NCBI GenBank assembly: GCA_002269645.1
Contig: NIVC01000027.1
Span: 186,001-250,000, forward strand
Length of the DNA: 64,000 nucleotides
Source: Macrostomum lignano
Lineage: Eukaryota
Direction of reading: 5' to 3'
The notes under the pieces are model-generated. The model did not search any database, had not been told where the DNA came from, and saw nothing but the letters and a program-made list of their open reading frames with translations. Position 1 is the first letter of the stretch. Every line of letters begins with the position of its first letter. Below, piece after piece: positions 12,237 through 62,752 of this stretch. Made by a program: the position numbers and the translations under genes.

Positions 12237-12275
12237 TGGCCCTGGGCTCTAGCCAGAAATTGCATTTAATACAGT

Positions 12276-15200
12276 ATGACTAAGCTCCACGCTGCCAAAG
12301 GAGCGACATTCTGTCTGCAAATTAATTTACAGCATTGCGTATCTGCGTCAGTAAATCTGATGAAGATTGCTGAGCTGTACAGGCCAGGCCTCATCCTGAT
12401 CCAGGAACCCTGGATGCGCAACGGTAAGTTGCCCAACATTCCCTCTGGCTACTCTGATTTTTATGTGTGTGGCCCGGGGAACAGTCGCCCTAGAGCGGCT
12501 ATCCTCGCTGCTAGCCATCTCCAGGCTTGGCTGAGGACTGATCTCTCTGATGGAGACCTTTGCGTCATCCAATCTAATCATTTCTCTCCGCGTACGTGTC
12601 TTGTTGCCTCGGTTTATATCCCAGGCGACAGAGACCCTGCTCCTGAGAGTTTACTGCGCCTCGCGCAGTACTGCGAGTCCCAGAACGCTGAGCTGTGCTT
12701 AGGGGGCGACCTCAACGCGCACCACAAGCACTGGGGCAGTAAAGATACCAACACTAGAGGAGAGGAGCTTCTGGCCCTCATCTCTAACACAAACCTCATG
12801 CTCTGCAACCGCGGCAGCACTCCTACCTTTAATAATGGCAGATGGACTGAGGTCCTCGACGCCACACTCGTTACCCCAAGACTCTTTGACAGAGTTGAGG
12901 AGTGGAGAGTCTGGTCTGAGGAGCCCTCCCTGTCTGACCACTGCTTTATCGCCTTTAACATCGCGGACACTAAAACCCAGTCTCCGATCACTTGGAGACG
13001 CAATATCCGCAACACTGATTGGGCGGCCTACAAGGCTGCCCTTGATCTGCACCTGCAGGAACTCACGGACTTACGTCCGATTGAGACCTGCGAGGATGTG
13101 GATCATATGGCTGAGACGCTGACAGGTTGCATTATTGAAGCCTACGAAGCGGCTTGTCCTGCTCGCGCCTACAAAGGCAAGACCTCGGCGCCGTGGTGGA
13201 ACCCGGAGCTGGGGAAACTCAGGCGGAAGGCCAAAAGCCTTCATCGCCGTGCCATGAAGACCGGAAACCCGGAGGACATGGAGCTTTTCCGGCAAGCCTC
13301 CCGCAATTTCAAATCTGAAGTGCGCAAGGCCAAGGAATGTAAGTGGCGCCAATTCTGCAATGAATTGGATCAAGACAGACCTACTTCTAGGCTTGTCAAG
13401 GCCCTGACAATGGACAAAATGTCCAAATTAGCCATGATCAAAAAAGATGTTGGCTCTCTTACTAAAGACCCTGAAGAAGTGCTTCAGCATATGCTTAGCA
13501 CATTCTTCCCGAGGGTACCTACTGCTAGACCGGAGCCCAACCATTCGATGGATGGAGCCACCCTAGCGGCGGGCATTGTCACTGAAGACCTAATCGCTCG
13601 TGCGGTCAGAACCTTCAAACCCTTCAAATCTCCTGGACCTGATGGTATCTACCCTGTTCTCCTTCGTGAAGCAGCCAAGATACCCTCGTTCCTGAGACTC
13701 ACCCGCAATCTTATGCGGGCCTCTATCCAGCTGGGATACGTTCCCAAATGCTGGACTGAAGCTCGGGTAGTCTTTATTCCCAAACCTGGGAAGGGCGACT
13801 ACCAAAGCGTCAAGGCCTTCCGGCCTATTAGCTTAACGTCAGCAATGCTTAAGCTCACTGAGAGGCTTATTCTCTGGCGGCTGCTGTCCTGCGAGCTGAC
13901 AGCGATGCCCCTCAGCAATAATCAGCACGCCTTCCGTACCGGGAGGTCGACTGACAGCGCCTTGCATGCGATTGTCGAGAAGATTGAAAGGGCGGTACTG
14001 GGTGACGGTTACGCTCTGGCTCTCTTTCTTGACATTGTTGGCGCCTTCGACAACGTTATCTTTGAAGCGTTTCAGAGGGCCCTTCAAAATCGCAAAGCTC
14101 ATGCTACCCTCATACGGTGGATCATGTACATGATCTCCAACCGTACGGTCACTGCCCAACTTCTTGGGCAAACTGCCTCCACCAGAGTCTGTAAGGGTGG
14201 ACCCCAAGGCGGAGTCCTCACCCCGACGCTCTGGAACCTGGTCATGGACGCTCTTTGAGTGACTCCCGACCCGACCCCGTCTTCAAAGTCGGGTATGCTG
14301 ATGACGTCACGGCCATTGTGGCAGGACCGTCTCCCAGCACGCTCAGGGATCTGATGCAGAGCTTTATCCGCAAAGCAGAATCCTGGGCCAATGACAATGG
14401 TCTGGAACTCTCTGAGCCCAAAACCGTTGCCATTATGTTTACCAGCAGACTACGCTGGAACATACGTCCTCTGCAGCTCTACGGCAGAGATATTGCCTTC
14501 GCGCACCAGACCAGATGTCTCGGGGTCATACTTGACCACCGGCTCAACTGGTCCTCCCACGTGAAAGCAAAAGCCAAGCGTGCCTCAGCCATCCTGGCCC
14601 AGCTCCGACGAGCACTTGGCACTTCTTGGGGTCTATCCCCAAAGCGGCTTTGGTGGATCTATACTTCCGTAGTTAGACCTGCCATTACGTACGCCTCTGT
14701 TGTCTGGGTTAGCGCTACCCAGGTCAAAAGCCATGCAGACCTGCTCAACACGATCCAAGGCAGAGCGTGTAGGCTCATCTGCAACGCCACCAGGTCCACG
14801 CCCTTTGCTGGCATGGGGGCCTTCCTTAATCTTCCGCCTCTTGACCTCTTCATCAGGGGTGAGGCGGCTAGAACGACGCGGCGTCTAATTGATGCCGGCG
14901 TCAAATTCATTTACATGAGAGCACCTGCTAAGCGGAACCTTGTCCCGCATAGCGATCTGTGCCTCAACTTTCTCAACGAGTGTCAGGCCAATCGCGTCTT
15001 CACCGATGGCATTGCCTCAACGCTCAACCTGAGACAGCGCTACTCCGTAGCTATCGACTCGCGCGATAACATCAATGACCAATGGAACCCTGGTGAGCTT
15101 CATTGCTACACCGACGGTTCTAAGCAGTCAGCCAACACCGGCTTTGGTGTTGGAATCTTTCTGAACGGGAGGGTCATCGCTACCCACGCTCAATACACTG

Positions 15201-16015
15201 GGGTCAACTCCAGTGTTCTCCAAAATGAAGTTCTGGCCATCAGCTCCTGCACTGCAGAGCTTCTCGCCACTGGCGTTACTGGTAAGAACATCATTTTCCA
15301 TTCGGACAGCCAAGCTGCCTTGCACGCCATCAGTGGCTGCAGCACCAACTCTGCTACAGTCCTCGACTGTATCAAACTCCTCAACATGTTGGGTTCCGCC
15401 AACAAAATTACCCTTAAGTGGGTTCCGGGGCATGTGGGGATCCGAGGAAATGAGTTGGCTGACACCCTTGCAAAAGTTGGTGCCTCCGGCTCCTCTCTCG
15501 GCCCCGAACCTCTTGTCCCGATTCCTGGCTGTGTCATCGACTCGCGCATCAAAGCGTGGATCAGGACTCAGCACCGCTCGACTTGGGCGAACCGCACGAA
15601 CTGCAGGCAATCCAGAGGCGCTGTCCCTCAGCCCTCTCACCAGCTCCGGAAGCTCCTCTTGCGCCTCTCGCGCAGAGACATCCGGGCTGCCACCATGACC
15701 CTCTCTGGTCACGGCTGCTTCTCCAGGCACCAGTACCTGCAGGGCAACGCCACCAACGCCACCTGTAGCTTCTGCAACTCAGGTGACGAAACCGCTGAGC
15801 ATTTCGTCAGCATCTGTCCCGCCTTCACGCGGGCCAGACTCACTTACCTCGGGCCACACACATCTATTACTGAAGCGTGCAAACCCGAAAACTTTAATCA
15901 GCTCATGCGCTACCTTCGGGCCACCCGCAGGGCTGAACTCTCCTTTCCAGAGAGCACCATAGCTGCTGGCGACACTGGGGGACCTCCCTGGGCGGCGCCA
16001 ACCCTCCGTCCATAG
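12276..16015 (+). CDS. LINE-A ORF2: AP endonuclease - reverse transcriptase - RNase H - Zn knuckle; 1-bp frameshift at 14254-14256
   Basis: LIQEP, GDLNAHH, SDH (APE); PGPDGI, QHAF, PQGGVL, YADD (RT); YTDGS, HSDSQAAL, GHVGIRGNELAD (RNase H); CSFC..HFVSIC. Confidence 0.93.
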
Positions 16016-16649: not shown

Positions 16650-18200
16650 CTGAAATTTCGACACTATCTCAGCGGCGCCGCCAACTTCACTGTCGTCACC
16701 GACCACAAGCCGCTGACCTTCATGCTCAAGCCCGGCTCGCGCCCACCTCCACGCAGCGAAGGCATGGCGCTCAGCATCAAGGACATGCAGTTCAGCGTCA
16801 TCTATCAGCCAGGCCCGTTCAACCCGAGCGACATCCTCAGCCGGCAGCCAGAGCCCGCTCCGACATCGATCAACATCGGCGAGATCTTGGACTCAAACTT
16901 CATCGGCAGCATCACACAAGCGGTGACGCCGAGAGGCCTGTCCCTGCAGCAAGTCCGGGAAGCCACGGCCCGTGATGCTATTCTATCGACTGTGCTGTCA
17001 TTTTTGAGAACAGGCAATTGCGATCTGCGGGACGGCAGCATCCGACAACTGCACGCCGACAGGCACGAGTTGACAAAGGCTTCTGGCCTTCTGCTGCGAG
17101 ACCAAAGATTGATAATCCCAAAAGCCCAGCGGCCCGCTGTTCTCCAGCTTGCTCACCAAGGACATCAAGGCGAGACCAAAACACTGCGCCGACTCAATTC
17201 CAAGGTCTGGTGGCCCGGAATGTTAGCTGAGGCCAAGCAACTGGTAGCACATTGCCTGGAATGTGCGGCCACCAAACATCAAGTGGAAGTTCCGGCAAAA
17301 CCCACTGCAACCGACTGAGCTGCCGGAGTCTGCCTGGTCCATCATCGGCATCGACTCTCTTGGACCTGCCAACGGCCGGCATTTCCTGATGATCGTAGAC
17401 CACAACTCGCGCTACCCCATGGTCGTGGCGATGAAGTCGATCACAGCTAACCGCGCCACCTGACAGTTACAGCAGGTCTTCCCGACCTTCGGGATTCCCC
17501 AGCGGATCGTGACGGAAAACGGTCCGACATTCACATCAGAAGCCTTCAGGAGTTTCGTCACAAGCCTCGGAATCAGCCACCGGCGCATCACACCGCACCA
17601 TCCCGAAGCAAATGGCATTACCGAGTGAATCAACAGGTCCCTGAACAAGCTGCTCTGCATCTCCAACGCCCAAGGAACCGACTGGAGGACGGCATTGCAG
17701 GAGTGGCTCGCCGCGTACCGCAGCACTCCGAACACGGCCACAGGAGTCGCCCCAGCCGACCTGATGTTCGGGAGACCAGTCCAAGACTGCATTCCAGGAG
17801 TCAAGCCGCAGGCTGCAGCAAAGACGGTCAGGAACAGAGACCGTCAGTACAAGGCCGCCATGAAGCACTACGCCGACCGACAAGATCCGCCGCAGAGCAT
17901 CGCATCCAAGCTGGCGATAAAGTCCTCCGCAGAAAATTCCAGCCATCGAAAACGGACACGCCATTTGAAATTCAGCCCTGGACGATTACGGAAACGGAGG
18001 TCAAAGGCGACTCTGTCATCCTGGAGAGCACGGGCGGCAGCAACAGGAGACGGACCAGACGAGACCGGCGGTCCAGAAGGCGACCCGACGGCCGCTCCAG
18101 CACCCGCGGAGCCACCGGCAGCAGCCGGTGCGGGGGAGCTGCCAATCACGAACCGTCAGCATCCAAGAAGCTGCAAACTGCCGCAACCCGATTATAGGAC
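16650..18200 (+). mobile_element. degenerate Ty3/Gypsy pol fragment (end of RNase H plus integrase)
   Basis: TDHKPL, HQGHQG..WWPGM..CLEC zinc finger, IGID, DHNSRYP, YRSTPNTATGVAPADLMFGR; several stops and frameshifts; no LTRs. Confidence 0.88.
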
Positions 18201-18790: not shown

Positions 18791-19037
18791 GAAGTCGTAT
18801 TAGTATTGCATGTATATAAGCCTAGTAAATATTAACTCTGTGATTTTTTCCTCTTCAGCAAACGTTTCTTTGCTTCCATAAATGGTGTAAGCAGAAATGT
18901 TTCAGGGGATCGCATGCACCCCTTACCTCCAATTAATGGTCTCCAAATAAGTTGCGCTCCTCCAGAAAATATTTGAAAGAGTTAACCGGCCATGACTTTG
19001 AAGAATGTCAGAATCCTAAATTTTGCCACCTATTCAG

Positions 19038-19803
19038 CGAGACAGGGGCGCCCACCAAGAGACAGGGACGCCCACCAAGAGACAGGGGCGCCCACCAAGA
19101 GACAGGGACGCCCACCAAGAGACAGGGGCGCCCACCAAGAGACAGGGGCGCCCACCAAGAGACAGGGGCGCCCACCAAGAGACAGGGGCGCCCAACAAGA
19201 GACAGCGCCTACCAAGAGACAGGGGCTCCCACCAAGAGACAGGGGCGCCCACCAAGAGACAGGGGCGCCCACCAAGAGACAGGGGCGCCCACCAAGAGAC
19301 AGGGGCGCCCACCAAGAGACAGGGGCGCCCACCAAGAGACAGGGGCGCCCAACAAGAGACAGGGGCTCCCACCAAGAGACAGGGGCGCCCACCAAGAGAC
19401 AGGGGCGCCCACCAAGAGACAGGGGCGCCCACCAAGAGACAGGGGCGCCCACCAAGAGACAGGGGCTCCCACCAAGAGACAGGGGCGCCTACCAAGAGAC
19501 AGGGGCTCCCACCAAGAGACAGGGGCGCCCACCAAGAGACAGGGGCGCCCACCAAGAGACAGGGGCGCCCACCAAGACAGGGACGCCCACCAAGAGACAG
19601 GGGCGCCCACCAAGAGACAGGGTCGCCCACCAAGAGACAGGGGCGCCCACCAAGAGACAGGGGCGCCCACCAAGACAGGGACGCCCACCGAGACAGGGGC
19701 GCCCACCGAGACAGGGGCGCCCACCAAGAAGAGACAGGGGCGCCCACCAAGAGACAGGGGCGCCCACCAAGAGACAGAGGCGCCCACCAAGAGACAGGGA
19801 CGC
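19038..19803. repeat. 20-bp GC-rich minisatellite (GAGACAGGGGCGCCCACCAA)n
   Basis: Directly visible; explains the many overlapping repetitive ORFs here. Confidence 0.97.
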
Positions 19804-20697
19804 CGTGCCCACGAAAACACCAAATATTGGCGCCCATACGTGCCAATTAAAATTCCTCGAATTAAAGTTCCGCATATGCCCCAAGCTACAATTTGATCGC
19901 TGCAAAAACGTTTCTGTGCACAAATTTGCATTTTACTTCGCATTCGACGCGAATTCCATGAAAAATGAGAGAGGAGCAAAACTTACAGCGAGAGCTAATA
20001 TTAGTTCTTAAAAAAATTTATCTGTCAAAAACCAGTGTAAAAAGAGGGGGTGGAAAAGCAGTGCTTTTATTCAACTTGGTAGGAATTTGTTTGCCGAATA
20101 TCAACCAGCCGATTTTCGGTGTTTAAACAGCGCTGTTGATTCAACAGCAGGAAATTTTCACTTTTGAAAATTTTACCACTCGGAGCTTGCTTTTATAGTA
20201 ACAGGGGGTGTAGAGGTAAAAATTATAGTTGCATGTGTATAGCAAAACTTCGATGAAAAATCTGATTTTTTACGCAGATTTTTGTGAGAAAGAACCGATA
20301 AAACGAATTAGACTTAACGAATTTTACGAATTAAACTTCTATAACTAAATAAACTAAACTATGAAACTTGCATGTGCGAGTATGTCAAAGAATATGTGCA
20401 ATAATTAACATGTTGCAGCTACTAAGTAAGACTCAGTACAGAGCGTCCAGTTTGACGTCTGACTAGAAAAACAAACTACAATTATCACGCAGTAAAACAA
20501 AATCGAACAGACTTAAAAAATAGGTTTAAATTAAGCAGGAGGTGTTAGCAGAAATTCGATGCATGTCATAGCCATGCATGGCATGTCATGTATTATATAG
20601 TGTGCCAATAAGTTCATTATCAGTATCGTTTTTCGCCATCACAGGGAAACTAACGCTCGTATAGGGAAACAAAAGAAACAAATTTGTCTCGTCTCAA

Positions 20698-22640
20698 TTA
20701 CTTCAAAACCGAAGCGATAGAATCCAAACTGAGCGCCAATAGACGACTCTTCTTGCAAATTGGCTGGCAGATGTTAATCTTGGCCTGCCGGCTTCCTCGG
20801 AATTTAGCAATTAGGTTATGAATATAGTAGGTGCCGGTCTCGGAAAACTCACCTACCGACAGCATCAGCAGGTAGCGATCTTCAACGCAGTGGTCGTAAA
20901 CGTAAGCTACAATCGAAGTCAGAATGCTAATAACAAAGTTAATGAATAGAACGGGGACAAATAGAACATAGAATACGTGCGTAACACTGAGGTCAATGCG
21001 GTCGATTCCGGGTACAAAAATATACGAGTCCACTATGCTCAACGATATTAGAAACGTGTTGTAAAAAGCTTTGAAAAATTCGTCTGCAGTATCCATTCGA
21101 GTATCTGACGAATTGCCGATTCGTGAAAAAGCAAAACTCGACTGGAACATCCGGGTGAAGAAACAAGTCATCACAAGATAGAAGAAAATGAATACTATTG
21201 AACTGGAGATGCACGTATAGAAACTGCTCATAAGTGTTGTTATTGGCAGAATGAGCCTGGCATAGCAGATGATGTTAGAGACACTGGCTAGCATGAGCAG
21301 CATGACGCAGCAGCCACACACTGGGTAGATGAATTCGCCAAGCAGCAAACAGTTCCGCCCTGCATCCATATAGAGCCACAGAAGCAACGCAGCGACAATA
21401 AATGACACCATGCAGGGCGTCATCCAGCTGACTATTTCCATCACGTTCTTTCTCGGACGTTGTGGGTAGCCAACCTTTCGTCTGCAAAAAATGAACCGAT
21501 CATTGCATTCATTGCAAGGTTTTAATATAAATTGTCACATTGCGGCTCAATTGTAACTCACCGATAGGTCTCCTTCTGCAAATACCAGAAACTGGCGTGC
21601 GCTACTCCGTAAAGATTTACAAATATCCAGATTAATAGAATGAACTTGAAACCAGTTGGCATCGCCGCATCGCTTCCGCCGCACCGACTTCGCAGGTAGT
21701 CATTGAGATCCGGCCCGGAGAACATCAGCGTGGCGAAGGTCATGAACAGTGAATTGCATAGATACACACCGAACACTACCTGGTTACGATGGAACAGCAG
21801 CTCAGCCCATCGACGCCAAAGCCTGCCGGAGCGGAAGATGCCCAGCTTTTTTAGTTCAGCCAAATCGCTGCGGCTGTACAAGTCTAGAAGCACGTTGATC
21901 GGGCCCGTCATGAACTGAGGACTGCCTCCGGTGATGTAAGCATCGTATGTAATTTGCTCACTCAAACCAAATGGTTCCGAGTGCACTTGCGGGCTTGAAG
22001 CGAGGTAAATGATAACGTACTCAACGTAATTGGCCAGGCCTAGGAACACGCCCCAGCTCATCGGATCCATTCCAAACCTACACAAGGTCTGAATCATTCG
22101 CTGTTGCTGTTCCGTCGTGAACAGGGTCCTGTGAAACAGATCTAACAGACTCTTGCACTCTTCAGTCATACCCGAGCCTGAGGCGGAACCGGCGCTCTCG
22201 TCAGTCATGAAGCGAATCGCGCTCATCAGCACGTGATACGCAGTGAAGCCGTTGTCGTTAATCTCAGCAAAGTCGACGCCAGATTCGTTCATAAACCGGA
22301 GACAGCGCTGAGCATTGTAGAAGATGGCAATAAAAAACGGATTGGTCGGAAACGGGTGCTTTGAGTTACCGATCGATGACGTGTGAAAAAAATTGGGATC
22401 GCAATCCGACCACGCGCCAGTAATGTCAAAGCTCTTCAGAAAATCTTTCCAATTCAATTTCTTCGAAGCCGCTTTTAAGTCGTCAACATTGTCGGTCGCG
22501 ATGCACTTTATAAATGCAAGCCATTGTCGGTGACCTGGTAGAAACTCTTTGATGTCAAACTGACCTGGCTCATTTTTGGTACTCGTATCTTCCTCCAGGC
22601 AATGTTGGACCGCAGTAGCAGGTGATACTTTGACTTTCAT
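20698..22640 (-). CDS. TRPV-like ankyrin-repeat cation channel, copy 1; exons 22640-21562 and 21481-20698 (620 aa)
   Basis: GT-AG intron 21482-21561 joins both ORFs in frame; ankyrin-like NGFTAYHVL, six hydrophobic segments, pore SLSIVD, S6 VLFINFVISIL. Confidence 0.75.
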
Positions 22641-25236
22641 GACGCGATTTTTTAACGCCTCGTTATTTTTTGTCTTTTTCAGTCAGTAGGTTGCCTTTCT
22701 ATCGGTTGTTTAAGGTGGTAGCTGTAGCTGCTCAGTGCCGCTGCAACCAATCGGATTGTTTGTACCTCACAGGGCCGAGCAGTCCTTATATTGAGTAGGA
22801 TATCTTCAATTTCTTCCCTAAGACTGGAAATATTCAAGTTATATGAGCCATTTGCTTTGCTTCCTTATACGAATTCTTGTTAACTGATTCTTTTAACAAA
22901 ACTTCTATTATTCCACTTCCTACGCTTGCACTTGGCTTGGCCAAATATTGAAAAATTCAATTTGAATGCATATAGTATCTGAGAAGCTACAACTTCAATC
23001 TTTCACGGCTTCACGTCGAGGCAAATTAAATTTCAATGAAAACAGAAACGGGATGCTTATGCACACTTTGGGAGGAGTTGCAATTGTAGCATTTGTTCTC
23101 CAATATGTACATTTACGCTTTGAAGTCTGAATAGTCTGAAGTTGGGATGACCGATGCATCTTGGAGACAAAAGCACGATATGTGAACAGAAATCCGGTCT
23201 AGTGTTGATAAGGCCACAGTGAACTAGGATTCCCAGCTAGTGGTGCTAATTCTTATCATCTGGGAATAAACAAGGCTTAAACAAAAGATGAAGAGTGTCA
23301 ATTTTAATCGAACTGAAGGAATCAATAAATAGATATGATGTTTTGTTAAAAAAGGGTACGGCTCGTAGTAGCTACTGCTAAAGTAAGTGTGGAATTCTTC
23401 AAATCAAACTGTCAAATTCGTGTGTATTAGTAACTGGTACAGGCGACTAAAATTGCTCTTTCTTACGTAAGGTATACTCAACAGCATGAAAAAGTTACGA
23501 TCCTTTGAGACTGCGCAGAAAATTCTAGTTCAGTAGCTGGTGACTTTTGAGTGACGCAACTTGCGCCACGCAACCCAGAGTTGGGCTGGGTGAGGAGGGA
23601 TCGGATGGGATGAAGCTTCCGCGCCCGGTTTTATTGCATTTTTTCAAGCATTTTTTAATATCAAAACGGTTTTACCAGGTGATAGACACTGGTCGAAAGA
23701 CACTGCTCACTGGGGCAAAAGGTGGCGACTTTTCAATGTTGCTGAGTATACTAAATGTTCAGTATAGAGCTGCAGATGCAGATTATATATTCACCTGGTA
23801 CATTGCTTTTTAGGCGAGGTTTTACAAGTCTGCCAAGTGCTCTCGTGAACAAAGTTGAAAATAACAACAACGACCACATGGTGTTACAGCGGTCCAGACT
23901 TTCTAATCGTCAGGCACGAACACTCGCTGTGTGCCTTGAGGTTGGGCCCTCTTGGGTAAAGTCCCAAATTAATTCTACCGCGGATATACTGTAGAACCGA
24001 ACGAGGGGCCAGAGGTGTTTAGCCCTAAGGTTGCTGCATTTACTAGTGCTTTTGAACATTGAGTTTTGTACCTGAAGCCTTTTTCTTTGCTGGATGCATA
24101 TCGTTTGCTGTAGCGGTTTGTTAAGGACTTGCAGCGTTCACTCGGATTTTTTGAAGGATGCTTTAATAGGCTTGCCAGATGCCTCTAATTCTACGGGTAG
24201 TTGCACATGTACGGAAGCTATAAATCTACGAAAATATCAATTGTTTTGCAACTGTAAATAATATCCAGATAACTGTGGATTCTTCCATTAAATATTTGTT
24301 ATGCATACAAGCACTGTGGCTTGCAATTGTACTTTATAGCGACTCTGCAAACTGTAGGAAACTGGGTATCAGCATAGCATGAATGCGGGTTGATTAATTC
24401 AATCATGTTGCAACAAGGCTTCACATCACAGAGAATTCTTTTATTTACCTAGCGGCAAAGAGAACTGAGCAAACAGAAGCAAAAATCTTTGGGGAATATT
24501 TCTCCTTAAATTCTGATTATAAACTTTCCAACTCGAACCCATGCAGTGCCGCTTTTGCGGCCCATTTCATCGAGTCACTTCAGAAGAAAACTGAAGTTGA
24601 AACCATATTTACGCAACTTGAACTATTGCAGAACGTGACCAGAAATTCAATATTATTTGTTTGCTAAAATAGAACTGAAGCTTTTTAAGTTTTTCTCTTT
24701 ATTTGTGAAGAAAAAAGACTTGACGATAGATGAGAAGTGTTGACTTAAAGATACAAGATAGGTGCATGGCTGTTCACCTGAGAAATCTGTGCCAGATAGG
24801 GCTACTCATGGCTGACTGCATCGCTTTACGCAGTTGTTCGTTGATATTGTTCGTAGCTCCAGAACTAATTTTCTTTGTTGCTTCGTTCTCTGTATGACAG
24901 AGAATCTTCTGAGTAGCATCTTCCGTTTGTTTCAGACGGTGCTCGAGACCATTTTGCTTCAACAACGGCTTAAGTTACTGCATGACATTTTCTAGTGTCC
25001 TGCGCGTGATTTAGCGTCGTACACTGTGTCTGTCGCCTCCTTTCCTGTCGACTGCTTTTCCTGTTGGTTAGCTGAGGCAGGGGCTGTACACTTTAAGCGA
25101 CATTGTCACACAACCGGCGAGAGGCATTGCTGCCCATTCCGCCGACTCCCCTGAGCAGGCACACAAGCGCGCGGATATGTACGCAGTCAAACGCACAGGC
25201 ACACACTCACACAGGAGTGCACAGCGGCCCTAATTT

Positions 25237-25423
25237 TATTTATCGTTAGGCATGTACACTTCACTGCGCCTTGGGGTTTGCCCTCAAGGACGTTAATTGC
25301 ACAAGCAGAGCCAAACCGCGATTCCAATTTAGCCCCAAATTAATGTGACTGCATTTGGAATCAAACCTGGGCCGCTGGCACATAAAAGCGCCGCGCGCGC
25401 TGGACCCCTAGACGACGGCCCCC
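25237..25423 (-). mobile_element. tRNA-derived SINE-like repeat
   Basis: Minus strand GGGGGCCGTCGTCTAGGGGT (A-box-like) ... CCAGGTTTGATTCC (B-box-like), GTCCTTGAG body motif, A-rich end. Confidence 0.45.
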
Positions 25424-26306
25424 AATTATTGCTTTTCCTGACCAAGCGGGTGGTAATTTTTTCTTCAGGTAATTCTCACAGCGCTTATGTGAACGTAGCA
25501 TATGCATTAGCTGATTCATCAACATTAGCAAAATTTGTGTTTCACTAATTGCAGTGGTAATAATACTGTATTGCATCATGCATCTACATGAATAAAAAGT
25601 ATAAAGTCGTCCCCTTGACGGAGAGCAAAGTGACGGAGACAAATTTTTGTTATTTTTAGTTCTAACCACTGGTGCATACAGTGAAGACTATAGTGCAAAC
25701 AGACGTTCATGGAAAGTAAATCAAGCAAAACCAAAGCCAATGGCTATTATATTGTCCCAGTTTTGCATAATTGAGTTTACAGAAGCTCACTGAGGAAGGG
25801 ATTGCTAATAAAGAAGGATTTTTGCATAAATCAGATTTTTATCGATTGCTAAAGCTACGAAAAAAGTTTGCTTAATACCATTGACTTTATATGCATGCAG
25901 CAACGATCTGATTAGTGGGAGACAGAGACACATTGTAAATAGTCAAGCGGATTAGTGGAAAAGTCAAACATTAACATTTTAAAGTAGAAATATTATTCAG
26001 ACAAATCAATAGTATATAAACTGACCTTTCGAGTTAGGACTGTGCTAATTGTTTTTTATAATCAGTGTTTTAAGGAAATAATTCAGAATAGCAGTATATT
26101 TATGTCATTTTATATCGTCGGGATTAATAGTTAAACAAACATTTTCAAGAAATTTTCAAAAAATCTGCGTGGACTATGTATTACCTATGGTGTAATTTAG
26201 CCAGCTTAGATTGCATGCAGGTTGCATAAACATGGCATGTCTATTATCAATTTCAATGCGGACAAACTATCGGAGGAGATCTCGGCTCTTCGACGCCATG
26301 ATATTG

Positions 26307-28299
26307 TTAAAACAGACTGCTTCGACTCTCGCTGTCTCTGTGTCCTGTCGCGCACGTGTCCGATGGCGCATCGATTGCTGATTCGAATGAGCAATAGCAG
26401 TTCACTATAAGCCTGCTCTGCTTTCGAATAGGACCGCAGAGTTTTATACGAACCTCTCGCCGACGAAAGCACTTACTTAATAGCTTGTGGATTAGGAAGA
26501 AAGTGGTCTCAGCGAACTCTGCCACGGATAGCATCAGCATGTACCTGTTCTCAACGCTATGTTCCTGCACGTGAGCGGCAATCGATGACAAAATGCCGAT
26601 TACAAAGTTGATGAAGAGCACAGGAACAAACAAGACGTAGAATACGTGCGTCACGTTTAGGTCAATACGATCGCTAGCCGGATAAAACTTTTCTGCATCG
26701 ACGATGTTAAGCGAAACCAGAAAGGTTTGATAGAAGGACTTGAGAAACTCGGCCAGATTATCCGGTCGGGTTGTGGTCGAATTTTCTGCTCTAGAGAAGG
26801 CAAAGCTAGACTGAAAAATTCTAGCGAAAACTCCAGTGAGCAGTACGTAGAGAAGGAAGAACCACGAGAACGTCACCATGCTTCGATAGAGGCTACTCAT
26901 CATTGCTGTTAGGCAGTGCAAATGCCGCAAGAAGCTGATCATCTGAGAGAAACCCGCTATTAGAAGCAGCATGATGCCGCAGCCGCTAACTGGATAAATT
27001 TGCTGACCTAGCAAGGCGCAGCTGTGCTCAGTGTCAAGGTAGATCCAGAGTAGAAAAATTGATGTCGGGAAGGCCAAGATGTACGGCAGGTACCAGCCAA
27101 GAATGTCGCCGACATTTTTTCGCGGCGAGCAGGGATATCCTACAGAGCGCCTAAAAGGAGATAAAATTTACTTTTATTTTCAGTTTTAACTTTGTGAATA
27201 ATGATTTGATGAAACTGTGTGATAATTAATAATTCGCTTACCGATAGCGTTCCTTGCGCATATAACCGTAAACAACTGCTACGGTGCCAAAGAAACCAAG
27301 CGTAATCCAGCCAATTAGTATTGTAAGTAGACCGTATGGAAACGTAAATGGCTTGTCAGAACACCGATCATTTAAATATTCGTACACGTTCGATCCGGCG
27401 AAAAATGCACTTGCGAATGTAAATATCAGTGCAACAAACAAGAATTGAACAAAGAACACTCGATTGCGCAAGTACAATGCCTCGGTCCACTGCTTCCAGA
27501 GAAAGCCGGTACGAAAGATTCCTAACGCTTTGATCTCAGCCAAGGTGCTCTGGCTGTAGATATCTACAAGAACGCTGATAGGACTGGTGAAAAAGCAGAA
27601 ATTCTCGGCAGTAAAATCTGACACATCAAACGAGATTCGTTCATTAAGACCTTCAGTGTCTGAGTGAGCCAGAGTAGTTGGAGAGCAGTAGATTAGGACG
27701 TACTCAACGTAATTCGCCAGGCCTAGGAACACGCCCCAGCTCATCGGATCCATTCCGAACCTACACAAGGTCTGAATCATTCGCTGTTGCTGTTCCGTCG
27801 TGAACAGGGTCCTGTGAAACAGATCTAACAGACTCTTGCACTCTTCAGTCATACCCGAGCCTGAGGCGGAACCGGCGTTCTCGTCAGTCATGAAGCGAAT
27901 CGCACTCATCAGCACGTGATACGCAGTGAAGCCGTTGTCTTTAATCTCAGCAAAGTCGACGCCAGATTCGTTCATAAACCGGAGACAGCGCTGAGCGTTG
28001 TAGAAGATGGCAATAAAAAACGGATTTGTCGGAAACGGGTGCTTTGAGTTACCGATCGATGACGTGTGCAAAAAGTTTGGATCGCAATTCGACCAGGTAC
28101 CAGAAGTGTCGAAGCTCTGTAAGAACTTCTTCCAATTGAGTCGCCGAGAGGCCGCTTTTAAGTCGTCAACATTGTCGGTCGCGATGCACTTTACAAATGC
28201 CAGCCATTCCGAACGGCTATTGACAATTCTTTTAATATCCATTAGCAATTTGGCTGTCTCTTTACCATCCATAGATTTTGGTGCTACTTTTGCCGTCAT
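26307..28299 (-). CDS. TRPV-like ankyrin-repeat cation channel, copy 2; exons 28299-27242 and 27150-26307 (633 aa)
   Basis: Intron 27151-27241 at the same phase-2 position as copy 1; pore SLNIVD; S6 VLFINFVIGIL. Confidence 0.75.
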
Positions 28300-28884
28300 T
28301 TATAAGCTAATTCTAATAGCTGGGAGAACTCGTTCACTTTGCTCTGCTGCACTCCAGCAATCAGAGAGGGACAATAAAATTGGAGCAGGCATTAGATTTA
28401 TTGCGTTTCTGTCTCATTGGTTCAAAGCTCCCTCCGTTCAATATTGATACTCTGACAGAATTTGATTTGCTGCTGACCAGTTATGTCTGATTTTTATGCC
28501 AGAATTTCATGTTGGGGCATAAAACAGCAGGTTATTTTTCGAGTGTAGCTTTACATTTTCTCTTGCAGTCATGAAAACTATCTAATAGGTTATAGCTCTT
28601 TAAATGTTTTTAATAAGGGCATACGCTTAAAATGTTTCAGAACTTTGTCTTTATATGAGCGTAAATACACTTTTGAAAGTCGTGGGGCATTTCAAAAACT
28701 CATCGTTTTGCATCGTTGAAGTGTTTGATTTTCTAGGTTAGGAAAGTAAAAAAAAACTGGCTTATCGACAAAATAATTTTCCGTCTGTACCGACTTCGAC
28801 GATGTAAAATTTTGAGCCTATGAAAGCGACCCATTTTTTCATTCAAGCAAGTATTGTCGCCTGTATTAGTTAGTAACAGTGAAA

Positions 28885-30858
28885 TCAGTTCTGCTGACAA
28901 TTCTTGGCCTCAAGCACAGCCGAGAGCCGTTCATTGTTGGCTGCCAGAAGTCGGCTGTGCCTACTCACTGGACGGCAGCAACGAAGCACCAACTGTTCAC
29001 CGCTGCTTCCCACTAGTTTCCTTATCGCCGACCGAGTTGGCGACAAAATCATCTCGGAGAACTCCGCCACCGACAATATGAGAAGGTAGCGATTCTCTGG
29101 ACTGTGCTCGTGAACGTGCGTTACAACCGATGTCAGAATGCCGATCGCAAAGTTTAGAAACAGAACAGGTACAAACAGGATGTAGATCATATGCGTGATG
29201 CTCATGTCGATTCGATCATCCGTTGGTGAAAGCATGCTCGAATCGATAATGTTTAGCGACACTAGAAACGTTCGATAAAAGGCGGTGAAGAAGTTGACAG
29301 ATTTTGGGCCACTATTCTCCTCCGATATTGAGGTGCTGTTTCTAACTACATAATCGCTGCTAGCAGAGAACAGGCGCACTTGAAATACGCGTGTGAAGAC
29401 GCCAGTTAGTACCAAGTAGAGCATGATGAACACGGTGAATGTACCAATGCTCTTGTACATACTGGTCATCAGGGTTGTAAGCGATGGGACCAGTCGGAGA
29501 TAGGCAACGATTAGCGATACACTAGTAAGCAGCAACAGTAGAATGCAGCAGCCGCTCACAGAGCAGATGTGATCGCCCAGCAGTCTGCAACTGTTGCCAG
29601 TGTCCGAGTAAAGCCATAAGAGAAATGTTGAGATGGGAATAGACAGCATCCACGGCAGGAACCAAAACAGCATGTCAACGTGCGCATGCCTAGGCGCAAT
29701 CGGATAGCCAACTTTTCTTCTGGAAGAAACATTGGTTAAATACCGCTATAATTAAGTATCCCTTCAGGACCACGAGCGTATTTAAAGTTGCTATACTTAC
29801 CTGTACTGCTCTTTGCGCCAGAGACTGTAGCCGCTGGCGGCAGTCCCAAATGTAGCATAAAAGAACCAGTAAACCAAGATGATGAACACTCCTATTGGAA
29901 ATGGAAAATCTCGACCTGAACACCTGGCCTTAAGAAAATCGTTGACACCGCCGCCAACAACTGACACCGTTGCCGCGGTGAGGAAAATTACGTTGGACAG
30001 AAGCAGCGCGGTGAAGAAGCGATTGCGCATGTACAACACTTCGGCCCACTGCTTCCAAATGAAACCAGTCCGGAAAATTCCAAGAGCCTTGATCTCCGCT
30101 AAAGTGCTTTGTCCGTACATGTCGACCAGGACACAAATTGGGCTTGTGAAAAAGCTGGAATCATCGCCGGTCATTTCGGACACGTCAATGCTGACGCGTT
30201 CATTTAGTCCAGCAGCGTCGGAATTCACGACGGGGGCTGGAACGCAGAATGTCATGATGTACTCGACGTAGTTTGCCAGGCCGAGAAACACTCCCCAACT
30301 GAGTGGGGCCATGCCGAGCTTGCAGGTTACATTTAGCATGCGGCGTTGCTGCTCTGCCGTGAATAGAGTCTTGTGAAACAGAGCTAACAGACTTTTGCAC
30401 TCTTCGGTTATGCCCGAGCCTGATGCGGAATCGGCGCTCTCGTCAGTCATGAAGCGAATCGCGCTCATCAGCACGTGATACGCCGTAAAGCCGTTATCGC
30501 TGATCCTAGAGAAGTCGACGTCGGATTCGTTCATAAACCGGAGACAGCGCTGAGCATTGTAGAAGATGGCAATAAAAAACGGATTAGTAGGAAACGGATG
30601 CTTTGAGTTACCAATCGCTGATGGATGCGCAAAGTTCGATTCGCAATCAGACCAGATGGCATTAATGTCGGAGCTCTTCAGAAACTCTTTCCAATTAAAA
30701 CTCTTTGAAGCTACTCGCAAGTCCTCGACATCATCGTTGGCTATACAATTGACGAATGTAAGCCACTCTTTGGGGCCCTGCAGGAAGCTTGTGATGTCGT
30801 TTTGAGTGTGCAGATCTGCCTTCGACAGTTGCCCGTTGTTAAGAATTAGCTCAAACAT
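28885..30858 (-). CDS. TRPV-like ankyrin-repeat cation channel, copy 3; exons 30858-29801 and 29719-28885 (630 aa)
   Basis: Intron 29720-29800 at the same position; pore SLNIID; S6 VLFLNFAIGIL. Confidence 0.75.
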
Positions 30859-37754: not shown

Positions 37755-40700
37755 TCAGGGTGGTCCGCCGGTCCGTCCTGCAGCGTGATCTTCCGTTGGG
37801 AAGAAACTGGCTCGTCTAGTCGCCCGAAGGAACTGGATGAGCCGTGGGATGCTGTCGGGCTGGCAAACCTCGTCAATGGACGGGTTCGGCCCGAGGTAGC
37901 GTAGCCGGTCTCTGTTAAAGAAAGGGCAGTGACAGACAAAGTGCTGAGCATCTTCATTGTCGCACTCGCAAAAGGGGCAAATTTCGCTCTCGAGGTCGCC
38001 TCGGAGGAAGCAGTGCCTGGCGAGGTAGCCATGGCCGGTAAGGGTCATGACAAGGGCTCGAATATCCTTCCGATTCTGGTTCAGAAGGATGTTTCTGAGC
38101 CTGTGAGACGGGCAAGGAACCGCGGCACGAGATTGCCGGCAGTTTTGGGTGCCCGCCCATCTGTCCCTGTGGAGGGAGTCAGCCCAGTCGTCGATCTGAC
38201 GATTGATGACTGTCAAGGGCATAGGGACCAGGGGGCAGGGCCGAAAAAAGAGCCAGAGCCGCCCCTCTTGGCGAGGGTGTCTGCCAGCTCGTTCCCCGGA
38301 AACCCTGCGTGCCCTGGGATCCACTTCAGCCTGACAGTATTGCTTCTGGCCAGGAGGTTGAGCTGCCGGGCGCAGTCGGCGACTGTCCGGGAGTTCGTTG
38401 TGGTGTGGCAAAGGGCCTGTAAGGCCGCTTGGCTGTCGGAGTGGATGACAATAGTCTTTCCTCTCGTAACCTTGGCGTTTAGCTCTGCAGCGCAAGAGCT
38501 GATGGCAAGGACTTCGTTCTGGAAGACTGTGGAGAGTCTACCAGTGTGCTGGGCATGCGTGGCAATTACGCGGCCGTTGATGATGATGCAGACCCCAAAG
38601 CCGGCGCGACCGTCTTTGATGGATCCGTCCGTGTAGCAATGGACCTCCTGGAAATTCCAGTGGTCATTGGCAGCATCCCTAGAGGGGATGGTGACCTTGT
38701 AGCGCTGAAAGAGGTTGAGAGTGCGGGGTTCGCCGTCAGATAGGACGTGGAGCCCGCCGCTGTCTCTCAAGTCCTTGAGGCAGAGGTCAGCGTGGGGCAG
38801 AAGCTTGCGCTTAGCCATGGCCCTATGGGGCTGGATTCGAATGCCAGCGTCAGCTAGACGGCGGGCAGTCTTAGCCGCTTCCCTGCGGACAAAGATGTCC
38901 AGCGGAGGAATGTTGAGGAAGGCGTTGAGGCCATCGTAAGGAGCAGACGGAGGGGCGCTCATGATCGTGCGACAAGCGCGCCCTTGCGCTCTCCTGAGAG
39001 CCTCTAGACAGGTCTTTATCTGCAGGGCGCTAGCCCAGATCAGGCCGCCATACGAGATAGCGGGCCTAACCATTGCAGTGTAGATCCACCAGAGGCGCTT
39101 GGGGGTGAGCCCCCAGGTGGTGCCGACGGCCCTGCGCAATTGCGCGAGGACTGCGAAGGCCTTTTTGGCTTTTGTTTGAACGTGGGGAGACCAGTTCAGC
39201 CTGTGGTCCAGGGTAATACCCAGACATTTAGTCTGCTTGCAGAAGGGGATTTCCCTTCCGTAAAGCGTGAGCGGCCGAATCTGCCACTTGGTCCTGCTGG
39301 TGAACATGATCGCTGCGGTCTTAGTCTCAGAGAGCCTTAAACCACAGCGGTCCGCCCATTGCTCAGCAGCGTAGATGAAGTTCTGAAGAAGGTCCCTGAG
39401 GGTATCAGGGGACGGACCAGATGCCACCGCGGTGACATCGTCCGCATATCCAACTTTCAGAATGGGGTCAGGCCGAACATCCCGGAGGAGCTCATCGATG
39501 ACCATATTCCAGAGAACTGGAGACAGCACCCCACCTTGCGGGCTACCTTTGCAGACGGGGACCGTCCTCTGGTAGCCCAGCAGACTGGCGGTGGCCGTGC
39601 GATGGCTGATCATGTACATGATCCATCTGGTGAGATGTGAGTGCGTTAGCCTCTCACAAAGAGCTCTTCGGAACGCCTCAAAGAGGACGTTATCGAAGGC
39701 GCCAATGATGTCCAGGAAGATCCCCAGAGCAAAGCCACTACCAAGCACGGCCTTCTCGAGTTTATCGACCAGGACGTGCAGCGCGCTTTCAGTGGAGCGA
39801 CCCGCCCGAAAAGCGTGCTGGTTCTCGCTGAGAGGTTTGTTCTTCAGCTCAACAGAGAGAAGGCGCCAAAGCACCAGTCTCTCCATCAGCTTGACCAGGG
39901 AGGAGGTCAAGCTGATCGGTCTGAAGGATTTGATAGAATGGTAGTCCGGGCGGCCTGGCTTAGGGATAAAGATCACCTTTGCCTCGGTCCATGCCTGCGG
40001 GACATAACCAAGCGTGATGCATGCCCGAAGAAGGCTGCAAAGTTTGCGCAGGAAGCCTGGGCATTTAACCGCCTCTCTTAGAAGGGCCGGTACAATGCCG
40101 TCGGGTCCTGGGGCTTTGAAAGGCTTGAAGGAATTTGCCGCTCTCACAATGCGGTCCTCCGTGATGATAGATGCAGCCAGCGCGTGACCTCCCTCCGAGT
40201 GATCCGGAGTGGTCTGGTTAGCTGGCTCGTTAGGGAAAAACGCAGTGAGCATTACATCAAGCGTTTCCCCTGGGTTGTCCGTGGACGTACCGTCGGTGCG
40301 TTTGACCGAGGAGAGCTTAGACATTTTGTCCAGCGTGAGCGCTTTCACAACTCTGGAGGTGGGGCGTGAGCCCTCTAGCTCCTCACAGTATTGTCGCCAT
40401 TTTTGAGCCTTTGCATTCCTAACCTGCCTTTTAAACTCATGAATTGCTTCATGATAGGCGGTTTGGTCTGCAGGGCTCTTAGTTTTAGTTGCTCTGCGGT
40501 GGAGTCTCTTAGCCCTGCGACGGAGGTTGCCGAGCTCGGGATTCCACCACGGCGCCGATTTTTTCCCTTTATAGGCTTTTAAAGGGCAGGACGCCTCAAA
40601 GGCGGCGGTTAGCGTCTCTGTCAAAACAGTCGCGCACTCATCCGCCTCTCGGCACGACGTGATCGTGAATGGTTGGCCAGGAGACCGATGGAATTCCTTC

Positions 40701-62640: not shown

Positions 62641-62752
62641 AGTAACAATAACACTCATAATATTTTTCTGAAAACTCAATTCTGACCTAATCTAGAAACA
62701 ATCCTATCATTCACAATAACCTATTTTAATTAGATTACTGTTTTCCTGCTGA

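What the first reader, a model, noticed from the sequence alone, without database searches (positions are those of the whole stretch)
20698..30858. Tandem trio of highly divergent, compact TRPV-like channels
Seen: three co-oriented 620-633-aa genes, each with one phase-2 intron inside the same Arg codon, a short ankyrin-like N-terminus and six TM segments. The TM regions have diverged strongly between copies. Established: TRPV channels are tetramers with an ankyrin domain and can form heteromers. Inference: a lineage-specific sensory or Ca2+-uptake expansion with a shortened ankyrin domain, possibly an undescribed subfamily forming heteromeric channels.
Basis: partly seen in the sequence, partly recalled or inferred. 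Interest (0 to 1): 0.7.

Follow-up and report, generated by a model that had tools for sequence, protein, structure and literature searches.

The report
Tandem divergent TRPV-like channel genes
Three neighbouring genes of the flatworm Macrostomum lignano encode very divergent relatives of TRPV cation channels with a shortened ankyrin domain; standard annotation misses them, they look intact, and what they sense is unknown.

Summary
Three co-oriented minus-strand genes (620, 633 and 630 aa) each have one phase-2 GT..AG intron inside the same Arg codon, six hydrophobic segments and an ankyrin-like N-terminus. The window is Macrostomum lignano.

"TRPV-like" is supported, but only through remote methods. 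Pfam and direct PDB sequence searches see no TRP channel. Two AlphaFold2 models (pLDDT 86 and 76) match almost only TRPV1-6 and Nanchung/Inactive over about 560-620 columns. A chain of full-length profile matches links the genes to TRPV5/6: M. lignano group to unnamed ~600-aa relatives at E 1e-25, and those to TRPV6 at E 5e-29.

The ankyrin domain has four repeats (equivalents of TRPV ANK3-6), not six. The TRP-helix Trp is Arg. The pore reads SLNIVD, with its Asp at the TRPV6 D541 position.

In crude trees the genes and their unnamed relatives fall outside vertebrate TRPV1/5/6. They could be TRPVL or an unnamed sister group; I had no TRPVL sequence to test this.

The contrast between a conserved N-terminus and diverged TM regions is mostly gene conversion confined to the ankyrin domain (dS 0.09 there, saturated elsewhere). 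Heteromer formation, Ca2+ uptake and transcription remain untested.

The parts
20698..22640 (-). Gene g1 (620 aa). Exon 1 21562-22640, phase-2 intron 21482-21561, exon 2 20698-21481.
   Evidence: intact ORF, GT..AG intron inside an Arg codon
26307..28299 (-). Gene g2 (633 aa). Exon 1 27242-28299, phase-2 intron 27151-27241, exon 2 26307-27150.
   Evidence: P0001 (UniRef A0A1I8HLH7, M. lignano) is 100% identical and spans the same splice junction.
28885..30858 (-). Gene g3 (630 aa). Exon 1 29801-30858, phase-2 intron 29720-29800, exon 2 28885-29719.
   Evidence: P0004 (UniRef A0A1I8HKA1) matches it and spans the same junction.
27685..28215 (-). g2 ankyrin-like domain, aa 29-205. Four helix pairs aligned to TRPV ANK3-6.
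   Evidence: No Pfam Ank hit.
27698..28208 (-). Gene-conversion tract in g2, paired with g1 22015-22525. It coincides with the ankyrin-like domain (codons ~31-201).
   Evidence: 93.8% over 514 nt; dS 0.09 for codons 86-210
22015..22525 (-). Gene-conversion tract in g1.
30345..30711 (-). Older or partial conversion tract in g3, paired with g1 22103-22469 at 85.8%.
   Evidence: dS 0.71
27625..27669 (-). g2 linker beta-hairpin, aa 211-225, with the conserved G217 and D225 of the TRPV 'YGP...YDL' hairpin.
26697..26756 (-). g2 pore helix and selectivity filter, aa 485-504 (FYQTFLVSLNIVD). D504 aligns with rat TRPV6 D541 and rat TRPV1 D646.
26562..26666 (-). g2 S6, aa 515-549, with N534-F-V536-I537-G538 in place of the TRP 'N-x-L-I-A' motif.
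26502..26558 (-). g2 TRP-helix equivalent, aa 551-569. R555 sits where TRPV has Trp (rat TRPV1 W697).
26430..26450 (-). g2 C-terminal beta-strand, aa 587-593, with the conserved C591-x-P593.

Best explanation
g1, g2 and g3 are old tandem paralogues from Macrostomum lignano. Each most likely encodes one subunit of a tetrameric six-TM cation channel of the TRPV type.

The predicted anatomy runs as follows:
- a cytosolic ankyrin-repeat domain cut down to four repeats (equivalents of TRPV ANK3-6);
- a linker with a beta-hairpin and a pre-S1 helix;
- S1-S4, then S5, pore helix and S6;
- a TRP-helix equivalent;
- a C-terminal beta-strand of the kind that pairs with the linker hairpin in TRPV structures.

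The pore loop reads SLNIVD. Its Asp sits at the position of the Ca2+-coordinating Asp of TRPV5/6, so the channels are probably Ca2+-permeable (inference).

The genes belong to a deep, unannotated clade of ~600-aa TRPV-like proteins. That clade is a sister of, or an early branch within, the TRPV/TRPVL lineage.

The paralogues diverged long ago in the linker and membrane domain. The S1-S4 sensor is the most divergent part, which suggests different stimuli (inference). Their ankyrin domains have recently been homogenised by gene conversion.

Shown: gene structures, fold, remote homology, conversion tract, purifying selection. Inferred: ion conduction, Ca2+ permeability, tetramer formation, sensory role.
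For: Gene models and a conserved intron in five paralogues.

Structure:
- AF2 model of g2 from a 54-sequence alignment: pLDDT 86.2, pTM 0.84. Its top 39 Foldseek PDB hits are all TRPV1-6. The best is human TRPV6 7s88_A at E 3e-9, TM about 0.55-0.59 over ~560-620 columns. TRPA1 first appears at rank 40 with TM 0.34.
- Independent model from only the 12 closest sequences: pLDDT 76, pTM 0.74, with the same secondary-structure elements apart from a few short helices in low-confidence stretches. All 50 top hits are TRPV1-6 or Nanchung/Inactive.

Profile chain (groups M, S and I are defined in the full report):
- M to S, E 1.9e-32 over 533 columns.
- M to I, E 1.1e-25 over 515 columns.
- I to rat TRPV6 162-608, E 4.7e-29 over 434 columns (ANK4 to TRP helix).
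- I to rat TRPV1 201-764, E 7e-18 over 463 columns.
- I to human TRPA1 514-1077, only E 6.7e-9 over 164 columns, S4-S6 only.
- Profile A2 against PDB: TRPV6/TRPV5 at E 4e-33 in one stretch.

Conserved TRP positions in all four M. lignano proteins: W271, F461, F496, Y524 and N534. I537 is kept in three of four (Val in P0003). The filter Asp D504 is present in g1-g3.

Selection: dN/dS 0.11-0.15 in the tract. Elsewhere dN is 0.43-0.51 with saturated dS, and the ORFs and splice sites are intact.
Against: - Direct evidence for TRP homology is absent at the single-sequence level. Pfam gives only a sub-threshold Ion_trans hit for g2 (21.8 bits against a cutoff of 25) and no Ank hit. phmmer and hmmsearch with the M. 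lignano-only profile find no TRP structure.
- The strict-family profile reaches TRPV5 only at E 0.004. Direct hhalign of the M. lignano group against TRPV6, TRPV1 or TRPA1 is not significant.
- Several TRP fingerprint residues are lost: F434 to N, G563 to T in the S4-S5 linker, A680 to G, and the TRP-helix W697 to R. Gating may therefore differ, or be impaired.
- I obtained no transcript evidence.
- The AF2 models are monomers. Neither a tetramer nor a pore was modelled.
Confidence: 0.8

Rival explanations
1. The genes are flatworm members of the already named TRPVL (vanilloid-like) family. TRPVL is the sister group of TRPV, known from cnidarians, annelids and molluscs and recently reported in unicellular holozoans. 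The genes would then be new members of a known family, not a new subfamily.
For: In NJ trees the clade M+S+I is sister to vertebrate TRPV1/5/6, with bootstrap mostly 78-98. That is the position described for TRPV L in PMC9242649 and PMC12980990. TRPVL is ancient and widespread in holozoans (bioRxiv 10.64898/2026.06.15.732245). This would fit the many unnamed, often intronless relatives on eukaryotic metagenome contigs.
Against: No TRPVL sequence was available, so there is no direct test.

The published TRPVL fingerprint is W - N G Phi F W N F I A A (PMC9242649 Table 1). It disagrees with the relatives and with the M. lignano proteins at several positions:
- position 441: W in group I, variable in M, against N;
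- position 666: Y/F against W;
- position 678: L, I or V against F;
- position 680: G in M and S against A;
- position 697: R, M or L against A.

That comparison depends on two different alignments.
Confidence: 0.35
2. The genes are divergent TRPA-type channels rather than TRPV-type.
For: S6 ends in ...N-x-V-I-G with Gly538, and the TRP-helix position carries Arg555. Human TRPA1 has G958 and R975 there, where TRPV has Ala and Trp. The only direct, weak hit of the M. lignano profile is to TRPA1 S6, at hhalign E 1.3e-3 over 37 columns.
Against: - The related group I aligns to TRPV6 and TRPV1 over the ankyrin domain, linker and membrane domain. It aligns to TRPA1 only over S4-S6.
- TRPA1 has TM-score 0.34, against 0.55-0.59 for TRPVs.
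- There are four repeats rather than about 16, and only a 15-residue C-terminal helix in place of the long coiled coil.
- Group I has Ala at the S6 position, so the Gly is derived within groups M and S.
Confidence: 0.05
3. The three products are obligate partners of one heteromeric channel.
For: This is only indirect. The genes are adjacent and co-oriented, with g3 and g2 585 bp apart. The ankyrin domain is kept near-identical between paralogues by gene conversion. From my knowledge of TRPV structures, that domain contacts the neighbouring subunit's beta-sheet.
Against: - Gene conversion between tandem paralogues needs no functional reason.
- The beta-sheet partner regions (aa 211-225 and 587-593) lie outside the tract and have diverged.
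- There is no co-expression or interaction evidence.
- Each protein keeps a complete pore and filter.
Confidence: 0.15
4. The genes are decaying or non-channel relics: untranscribed duplicates, or proteins that no longer conduct ions.
For: Key gating residues are lost (S4-S5 linker Gly, TRP-helix Trp). I obtained no transcript evidence. No canonical AATAAA lies within 400 nt of any stop, and only an ATTAAA 270 nt after the g3 stop. The surroundings are rich in repeats and retroelements.
Against: - All three ORFs and all splice sites are intact although dS is saturated.
- dN is well below dS (dN/dS 0.11-0.27 where it can be measured).
- Pore-helix, filter and S6 residues are conserved across M. 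lignano paralogues and across distant relatives.
- The confident AF2 fold argues against decay.
Confidence: 0.07

Closest known systems
TRPV5/TRPV6 (vertebrate epithelial Ca2+ channels)
   Same: Best profile and structure match. Similar core size: the 7s88_A chain has 614 residues, against 620-633 here. The order ANK4-6, linker hairpin, 6TM, TRP helix is shared. The pore-loop Asp is aligned (D504 with D541), and the pore helix is similar (FYQTFLVSLNIVD against FSTFELFLTIID).
   Different: About 12-15% identity. Four ankyrin repeats rather than six. Filter N-I-V-D rather than T-I-I-D. S6 N-x-V-I-G rather than N-x-L-I-A. TRP-helix Trp replaced by Arg. No long calmodulin-binding C-terminus. The clade falls outside the TRPV1/5/6 clade in NJ trees.
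TRPVL (vanilloid-like family; cnidarians, annelids, molluscs, unicellular holozoans)
   Same: Described as the sister of TRPV, which is the position the clade takes in my trees. Poorly characterised, with no solved structure.
   Different: Membership could not be tested because no reference sequence was available. The published fingerprint differs at several positions. No paper in the library mentions both TRPVL and Platyhelminthes.
TRPV1-4 and insect Nanchung/Inactive
   Same: Same fold, with TM-scores 0.49-0.59 over the full length. The related group I matches rat TRPV1 at E 7e-18 from ANK3 to the TRP helix.
   Different: Those proteins are longer and have six repeats, the GM(L)GD filter and the TRP-box Trp.
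TRPA1
   Same: Gly at the end of the S6 motif and Arg at the TRP-helix fingerprint position. From my knowledge of the TRPA1 structure, the linker and C-terminal strands also form a beta-sheet.
   Different: About 16 ankyrin repeats and a C-terminal coiled coil. Only S4-S6 aligns. TM-score 0.34.

Membership tests
TRP superfamily, group 1 | Six-TM subunit with a pore helix between S5 and S6, followed by a TRP helix | tested here: met
   Two AF2 models give S1-S6, pore helix 485-499 and a helix at 551-569. Foldseek matches TRP channel structures over the full length.
TRP superfamily, group 1 | [quoted passage not shown] | tested here: inconclusive
   g2 has W271 N279 F286 T434 F461 F496 Y524 N534 V536 I537 G538 R555. 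About 7-8 of 12 are kept, similar to the 7-8 the paper lists for TRPVL, TRPS and TRPY.
TRPV | N-terminal ankyrin-repeat domain of six repeats | tested here: not met
   Only four helix pairs, aligned to TRPV1/TRPV6 ANK3-6. No Pfam Ank hit. The repeat numbering of TRPV1 and TRPV6 is from my own knowledge.
TRPV | Linker beta-hairpin plus a C-terminal beta-strand after the TRP helix | tested here: met
   Strands 211-216, 219-225 and 587-593 appear in both models. G217 and D225 align with the TRPV hairpin motif. Sheet pairing itself was not checked, because no coordinates were available.
TRPV | TRP box with conserved Trp (rat TRPV1 W697) and the S6 N-x-L-I-A motif | tested here: not met
   R555 replaces the Trp. 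S6 reads N-F-V-I-G.
TRPV | Acidic residue in the selectivity filter (TRPV1 D646, TRPV6 D541) | tested here: met
   D504 is aligned in g1-g3. The paralogue P0003 has Asn there.
TRPV | Closest characterised relatives by sequence profile and by structure are TRPVs | tested here: met
TRPV | Phylogenetic placement inside the TRPV clade | tested here: inconclusive
   NJ trees rooted on TRPA1 put M+S+I outside TRPV1/5/6. M+S+I has bootstrap 32-98, mostly 78-98. TRPV1/5/6 has 82-100. Invertebrate TRPVs (OSM-9/OCR, Nan/Iav) and TRPVL were not included, and the method is crude.
TRPVL | Grouping with reference TRPVL (Nematostella, Capitella) in a phylogeny | not testable with these tools
   No TRPVL sequence could be obtained. 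The protein searches returned no named relatives, and the papers' supplements hold no sequences.
TRPVL | Published fingerprint W - N G Phi F W N F I A A | tested here: inconclusive
   Mismatches at the positions equivalent to TRPV1 441, 666, 678, (680) and 697. The comparison crosses two different alignments.
TRPA | Long ankyrin array (about 14-17 repeats) and a C-terminal coiled coil | tested here: not met
   Four repeats, and only a 15-residue C-terminal helix at 599-613. TRPA1 aligns only over S4-S6.

The most novel reading that the evidence does not exclude
The M. lignano genes, together with the unnamed S and I groups (about 50 proteins of ~600 aa from metagenome and SRA assemblies), form a TRP family of their own. 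It would be sister to TRPV and distinct from TRPVL.

Its defining features would be:
- a four-repeat ankyrin domain;
- an LN(I/M)VD filter;
- an invariant S1-S2-loop Cys (C313);
- an invariant His at the start of S6 (H521).

M. lignano would be the first annotated, genetically tractable organism that carries it. Within M. lignano, the ankyrin domain would be kept uniform across paralogues by concerted evolution because the subunits share a cytosolic partner or co-assemble.
Probability: 0.25. Interest if true: 0.65.

Novelty: new variant of a known kind. Interest (0 to 1): 0.45.

Why it matters
TRP channels are the main polymodal sensors of animals, and their family tree is still being revised: TRPVL, TRPS and unclassified TRPV-like genes in molluscs are recent additions.

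These genes show that a TRPV-type channel can diverge so far that Pfam and direct sequence searches no longer see it. TRP inventories of flatworms and other lophotrochozoans therefore probably undercount the family. Bais and Greenberg (PMC5196486) list one M. lignano TRPV and none in parasitic flatworms.

The clade offers a natural minimal TRPV: four ankyrin repeats, no TRP-box Trp, and an altered filter. That is useful for asking which parts of the TRPV architecture gating really needs.

M. lignano is a laboratory flatworm that, to my knowledge, has transgenesis and RNAi. Expression and function are therefore directly testable.

The sharp boundary between a gene-converted ankyrin domain and a saturated membrane domain is a clean example of mosaic concerted evolution within a tandem array.

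Tried and rejected
- Pfam on the three proteins: only a sub-threshold Ion_trans hit for g2.
- Direct PDB sequence searches with g2 and with the M. lignano-only profile: chance hits only, to the PsbW TM helix.
- Word-indexed homologue search with the 54-sequence alignment: only the M. lignano proteins came back.
- Word-indexed search with the intermediate P0039: eight unnamed proteins. No named reference TRPs could be fetched, and all three searches are spent.
- Cluster look-ups gave no names or organisms for the relatives.
- A literature search for the assembly and sample accessions found nothing, so the organisms behind groups S and I remain unknown.
- Contig ends and GC content did not identify them either.
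P0001, P0004 and P0005 are not on record.
- Paper supplements hold no TRPVL or reference sequences.
- The precomputed PF23317 (YVC1_C) hits on group I proteins were considered. I read them as generic TRP membrane-domain similarity. My own Pfam scan did not list that family, and TRPV matches are far stronger.
- P0024, which was part of alignment A2, is a plain ankyrin-repeat protein. It explains the DARPin and NOMPC hits, and I excluded it afterwards.
I used them only after PDB searches confirmed them: two residues of the TRPA1 membrane-domain fragment were corrected from the printed alignment, the alignments printed for the two N-terminal fragments show no mismatch, and the TRPV1 membrane fragment matched rat TRPV1 at 777 bits over 344 residues.
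Full report
**The sequence.** ORF listing and inspection of the junctions show three minus-strand genes of two exons each.
- g1: 22640..21562 and 21481..20698, 620 aa.
- g2: 28299..27242 and 27150..26307, 633 aa.
- g3: 30858..29801 and 29719..28885, 630 aa.

The introns are 80, 91 and 81 nt long. They start GTGAGT, GTAAGC and GTAAGT and end in AG. Each interrupts an Arg codon after its second base (CG|A, CG|G, AG|A) in the conserved ...YR|R(K/S)VGYP... motif. tblastn finds no further copies or fragments in the window. g3 and g2 are 585 bp apart, and g2 and g1 are 3.7 kb apart.

**Organism and paralogues.** A homologue search returns only Macrostomum lignano proteins.
- P0001 is 100% identical to g2, and P0004 equals g3. 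Both span the splice junction I predicted.
- P0003 (623 aa, BOX15_Mlig003410g1) is a fourth paralogue on contig NIVC01001778.1.
- At that locus there are two tandem paralogues. Both carry the same phase-2 intron in the same Arg codon.
- A fragment, P0005, represents at least one more member.

The family therefore has five genomic paralogues in two tandem clusters, and probably six or more members in all. Named databases call these proteins only 'Ion_trans domain-containing protein' or 'hypothetical protein'.

**Divergence pattern.** The three proteins are 47-59% identical, but the identity is very uneven.
- Codons ~31-201 of g1 and g2 are 93.8% identical at the nucleotide level (g1 22015-22525 against g2 27698-28208).
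- g3 shares an 85.8% tract with g1 (30345-30711 against 22103-22469).
- In codons 86-210, dS is 0.09 for g1-g2 and 0.71 against g3, with dN/dS 0.11-0.15.
- In the rest of the gene dS is saturated and dN is 0.43-0.51.

The tract coincides with the ankyrin-like domain. The 'conserved N-terminus, diverged TM' picture is therefore old duplicates plus recent gene conversion confined to one domain. It does not show unusually fast evolution of the membrane domain. Within the unconverted part, S5-pore-S6 is the most conserved region and S1-S4 the least.

**Is it a TRP channel?** Direct methods fail.
- Pfam gives only a sub-threshold Ion_trans hit for g2 and no ankyrin hit.
- phmmer and a profile of the four M. 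lignano proteins find no TRP structure in the PDB.

An exhaustive profile search of 1.84 billion representative proteins finds just 54 proteins at E<=1e-3. Only five are at or below 1e-30: P0003, P0004 and P0001, which are M. lignano, and two unnamed fragments, of which P0006 largely repeats P0003. The rest are unnamed proteins of ~580-660 aa, or fragments, from ENA and Logan assemblies.

All-against-all scores split the proteins into three groups:
- M: the M. lignano proteins.
- S: P0007-P0014, P0016, P0019 and P0031.
- I: 'intermediates' such as P0039, P0046 and P0052.

Only group I has direct pairwise similarity to TRPV5/6.

Profile-profile comparison gives a chain of full-length matches.

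| Comparison | E-value | Columns | Extent |
|---|---|---|---|
| M to S | 1.9e-32 | 533 | full length |
| M to I | 1.1e-25 | 515 | full length |
| S to I | 3.4e-36 | 533 | full length |
| I to rat TRPV6 162-608 | 4.7e-29 | 434 | ANK4 to TRP helix |
| I to rat TRPV1 201-764 | 7e-18 | 463 | ANK3 to TRP helix |
| I to human TRPA1 514-1077 | 6.7e-9 | 164 | S4-S6 only |

The reference fragments came from, or were verified against, PDB sequences. A mixed profile (A2) hits TRPV6 and TRPV5 at E 4e-33 in a single stretch. The strict M+S profile reaches TRPV5 only at E 0.004.

**Structure.** AlphaFold2 on g2 with the 54-sequence alignment gives pLDDT 86.2 and pTM 0.84.
- Foldseek against the PDB returns TRPV1-6 for the top 39 hits. 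TRPV6 7s88_A is first, at E 3e-9, with TM 0.55-0.59 over 560-620 columns and 12-15% identity.
- TRPA1 first appears at rank 40, with TM 0.34.

As a control, I made a second model from only the 12 M and S sequences, with none of the TRPV-like intermediates.
- It gives essentially the same secondary-structure elements, at pLDDT 76 and pTM 0.74.
- All 50 of its top hits are TRPV1-6 or Nanchung/Inactive.

**Anatomy** (g2 numbering).
- Four ankyrin-like helix pairs at aa ~29-61, 88-122, 123-170 and 180-205 align with TRPV ANK3, 4, 5 and 6. The equivalents of ANK1-2 are missing.
- A linker beta-hairpin sits at 211-225, with G217 and D225 of the TRPV 'YGP..YDL' motif.
- The pre-S1 helix carries the invariant W271.
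- S1-S6 follow.
- The pore helix and filter read FYQTFLVSLNIVD. D504 lies in the column of TRPV6 D541 and TRPV1 D646. The paralogue P0003 has Asn there.
- S6 has N534, I537 and G538.
- A TRP-helix equivalent runs from 551 to 569, with R555 where TRPVs have Trp.
- A C-terminal beta-strand at 587-593 is followed by a short helix.

Against the twelve fingerprint positions of Cabezas-Bratesco et al. (PMC9242649), the M. lignano proteins keep about 7-8. The G538/R555 combination is the one seen in TRPA1. Group I has Ala at the S6 position, so the Gly is derived.

Residues shared by M, S and I but absent from TRPV1/5/6 and TRPA1 support a common clade:
- C313 in the S1-S2 loop (29 of 29 sequences);
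- H521 at the start of S6 (29 of 29);
- N501 of the LN(I/M)VD filter (25 of 29).

**Placement.** I built neighbour-joining trees with three aligners, whole-length or domain partitions and two distance measures, rooted on TRPA1.

| Clade | Bootstrap |
|---|---|
| M+S | 61-100 |
| M+S+I | 32-98, mostly 78-98 |
| TRPV1/5/6 | 82-100 |
| I+TRPV5/6 | 0-1 |

The clade therefore lies outside the vertebrate TRPVs. That is the position reported for TRPVL (PMC9242649, PMC12980990). TRPVL has also been reported in choanoflagellates, a free-living ichthyosporean and filastereans (bioRxiv 10.64898/2026.06.15.732245).

I could not obtain any TRPVL, OSM-9/OCR or Nan/Iav sequence, so TRPVL membership is untested. 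The published TRPVL fingerprint disagrees at several positions, but across different alignments. Unclassified TRPV/TRPVL-like genes have been noted in abalone. No paper in the library links TRPVL to flatworms. Bais and Greenberg list one M. lignano TRPV gene model and no TRPV in parasitic flatworms (PMC5196486).

**Relatives.** Several group I genes are intronless. They sit in tandem arrays on long eukaryotic contigs from metagenomes: three paralogues within 20 kb on a 382-kb contig, and two within about 12 kb on a 2.49-Mb contig. Their organisms could not be identified. The gene callers behind those collections find only uninterrupted ORFs, so relatives with introns would be under-represented.

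**Mechanism.** The most likely reading is that each gene encodes a subunit of a tetrameric, TRPV-type cation channel.
- The filter has an Asp ring, which suggests Ca2+ permeability.
- The paralogues differ most in the S1-S4 sensor domain and in the loops.
- They share a near-identical cytosolic ankyrin domain.

Conduction, tetramer formation, Ca2+ permeability and a sensory role are inferences from homology. Heteromer formation is possible but has only circumstantial support.

**Verdict.** This is a real, intact and very divergent TRPV-type channel cluster. It is a new variant of a known kind and of moderate interest. The main open question is whether the wider clade is TRPVL or an unnamed family.

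Noticed in passing
window 27698-28208, 22015-22525, 30345-30711: Gene conversion among the three paralogues is confined to the ankyrin-like domain. The boundary is sharp: dS is 0.09 inside and saturated outside. This is a mosaic of concerted and divergent evolution within one tandem array.
   Followed up: yes
L002 5993-7945 and 10001-11973 (M. lignano NIVC01001778.1): A second tandem pair of paralogues sits between an Arv1 gene and a UGGT gene. Both carry the same phase-2 Arg-codon intron. The UniRef model P0002 is a chimera of the two.
   Followed up: partly
L003 (ERZ26222911 ctg1020157, 382 kb) and L009 (ERZ26052378 ctg10959, 2.49 Mb): Distant relatives of ~600 aa are intronless. They also occur in tandem arrays, on long eukaryotic contigs from metagenomes of unknown organisms. 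Their precomputed Pfam label is PF23317 (YVC1_C).
   Followed up: partly
window 18952-20011: A 20-bp satellite (GAGACAGGGGCGCCCACCAA, 38.7 copies, 19039-19804) yields spurious ORFs of 141-339 aa in all six frames, just downstream of the g1 stop codon.
   Followed up: partly
window 589-5710: A large satellite array with 20-bp unit ACTGTCGGGACGAAGCATTA, about 242 copies, and 64- and 84-bp higher-order periods.
   Followed up: no
window 11098-16015 (+) and 38213-42804 (-): Two copies of a non-LTR retrotransposon with endonuclease, reverse transcriptase and RNase H. GC is 54-58%, against 42-44% for the surroundings. The minus-strand copy has an intact 1083-aa ORF2 and a 447-aa ORF1. ORF2 of the plus-strand copy is split near 14255.
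   Followed up: partly
window 16722-17318 (+): A 198-aa ORF with an integrase zinc-binding domain (Integrase_H2C2, E 5.6e-16). It is probably a fragment of an LTR element or similar.
   Followed up: no
window 47619-49535 (-): An intronless 638-aa ORF, rich in Cys and His, with no Pfam family above threshold (weak DUF1258, E 0.002). It may be a transposase-derived gene.
   Followed up: partly
window 60495-61220 (+): A 241-aa ORF with an AAA domain and a BCS1-like lid domain. It is probably one exon of a BCS1-type AAA ATPase gene.
   Followed up: no
window 56588-56787, 58657-59579, 61427-62641, 63278-64000: Four more tandem-repeat arrays, with units of 21, 59, 21 and 32 bp. The last runs off the end of the window. 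The region is unusually rich in satellites.
   Followed up: no
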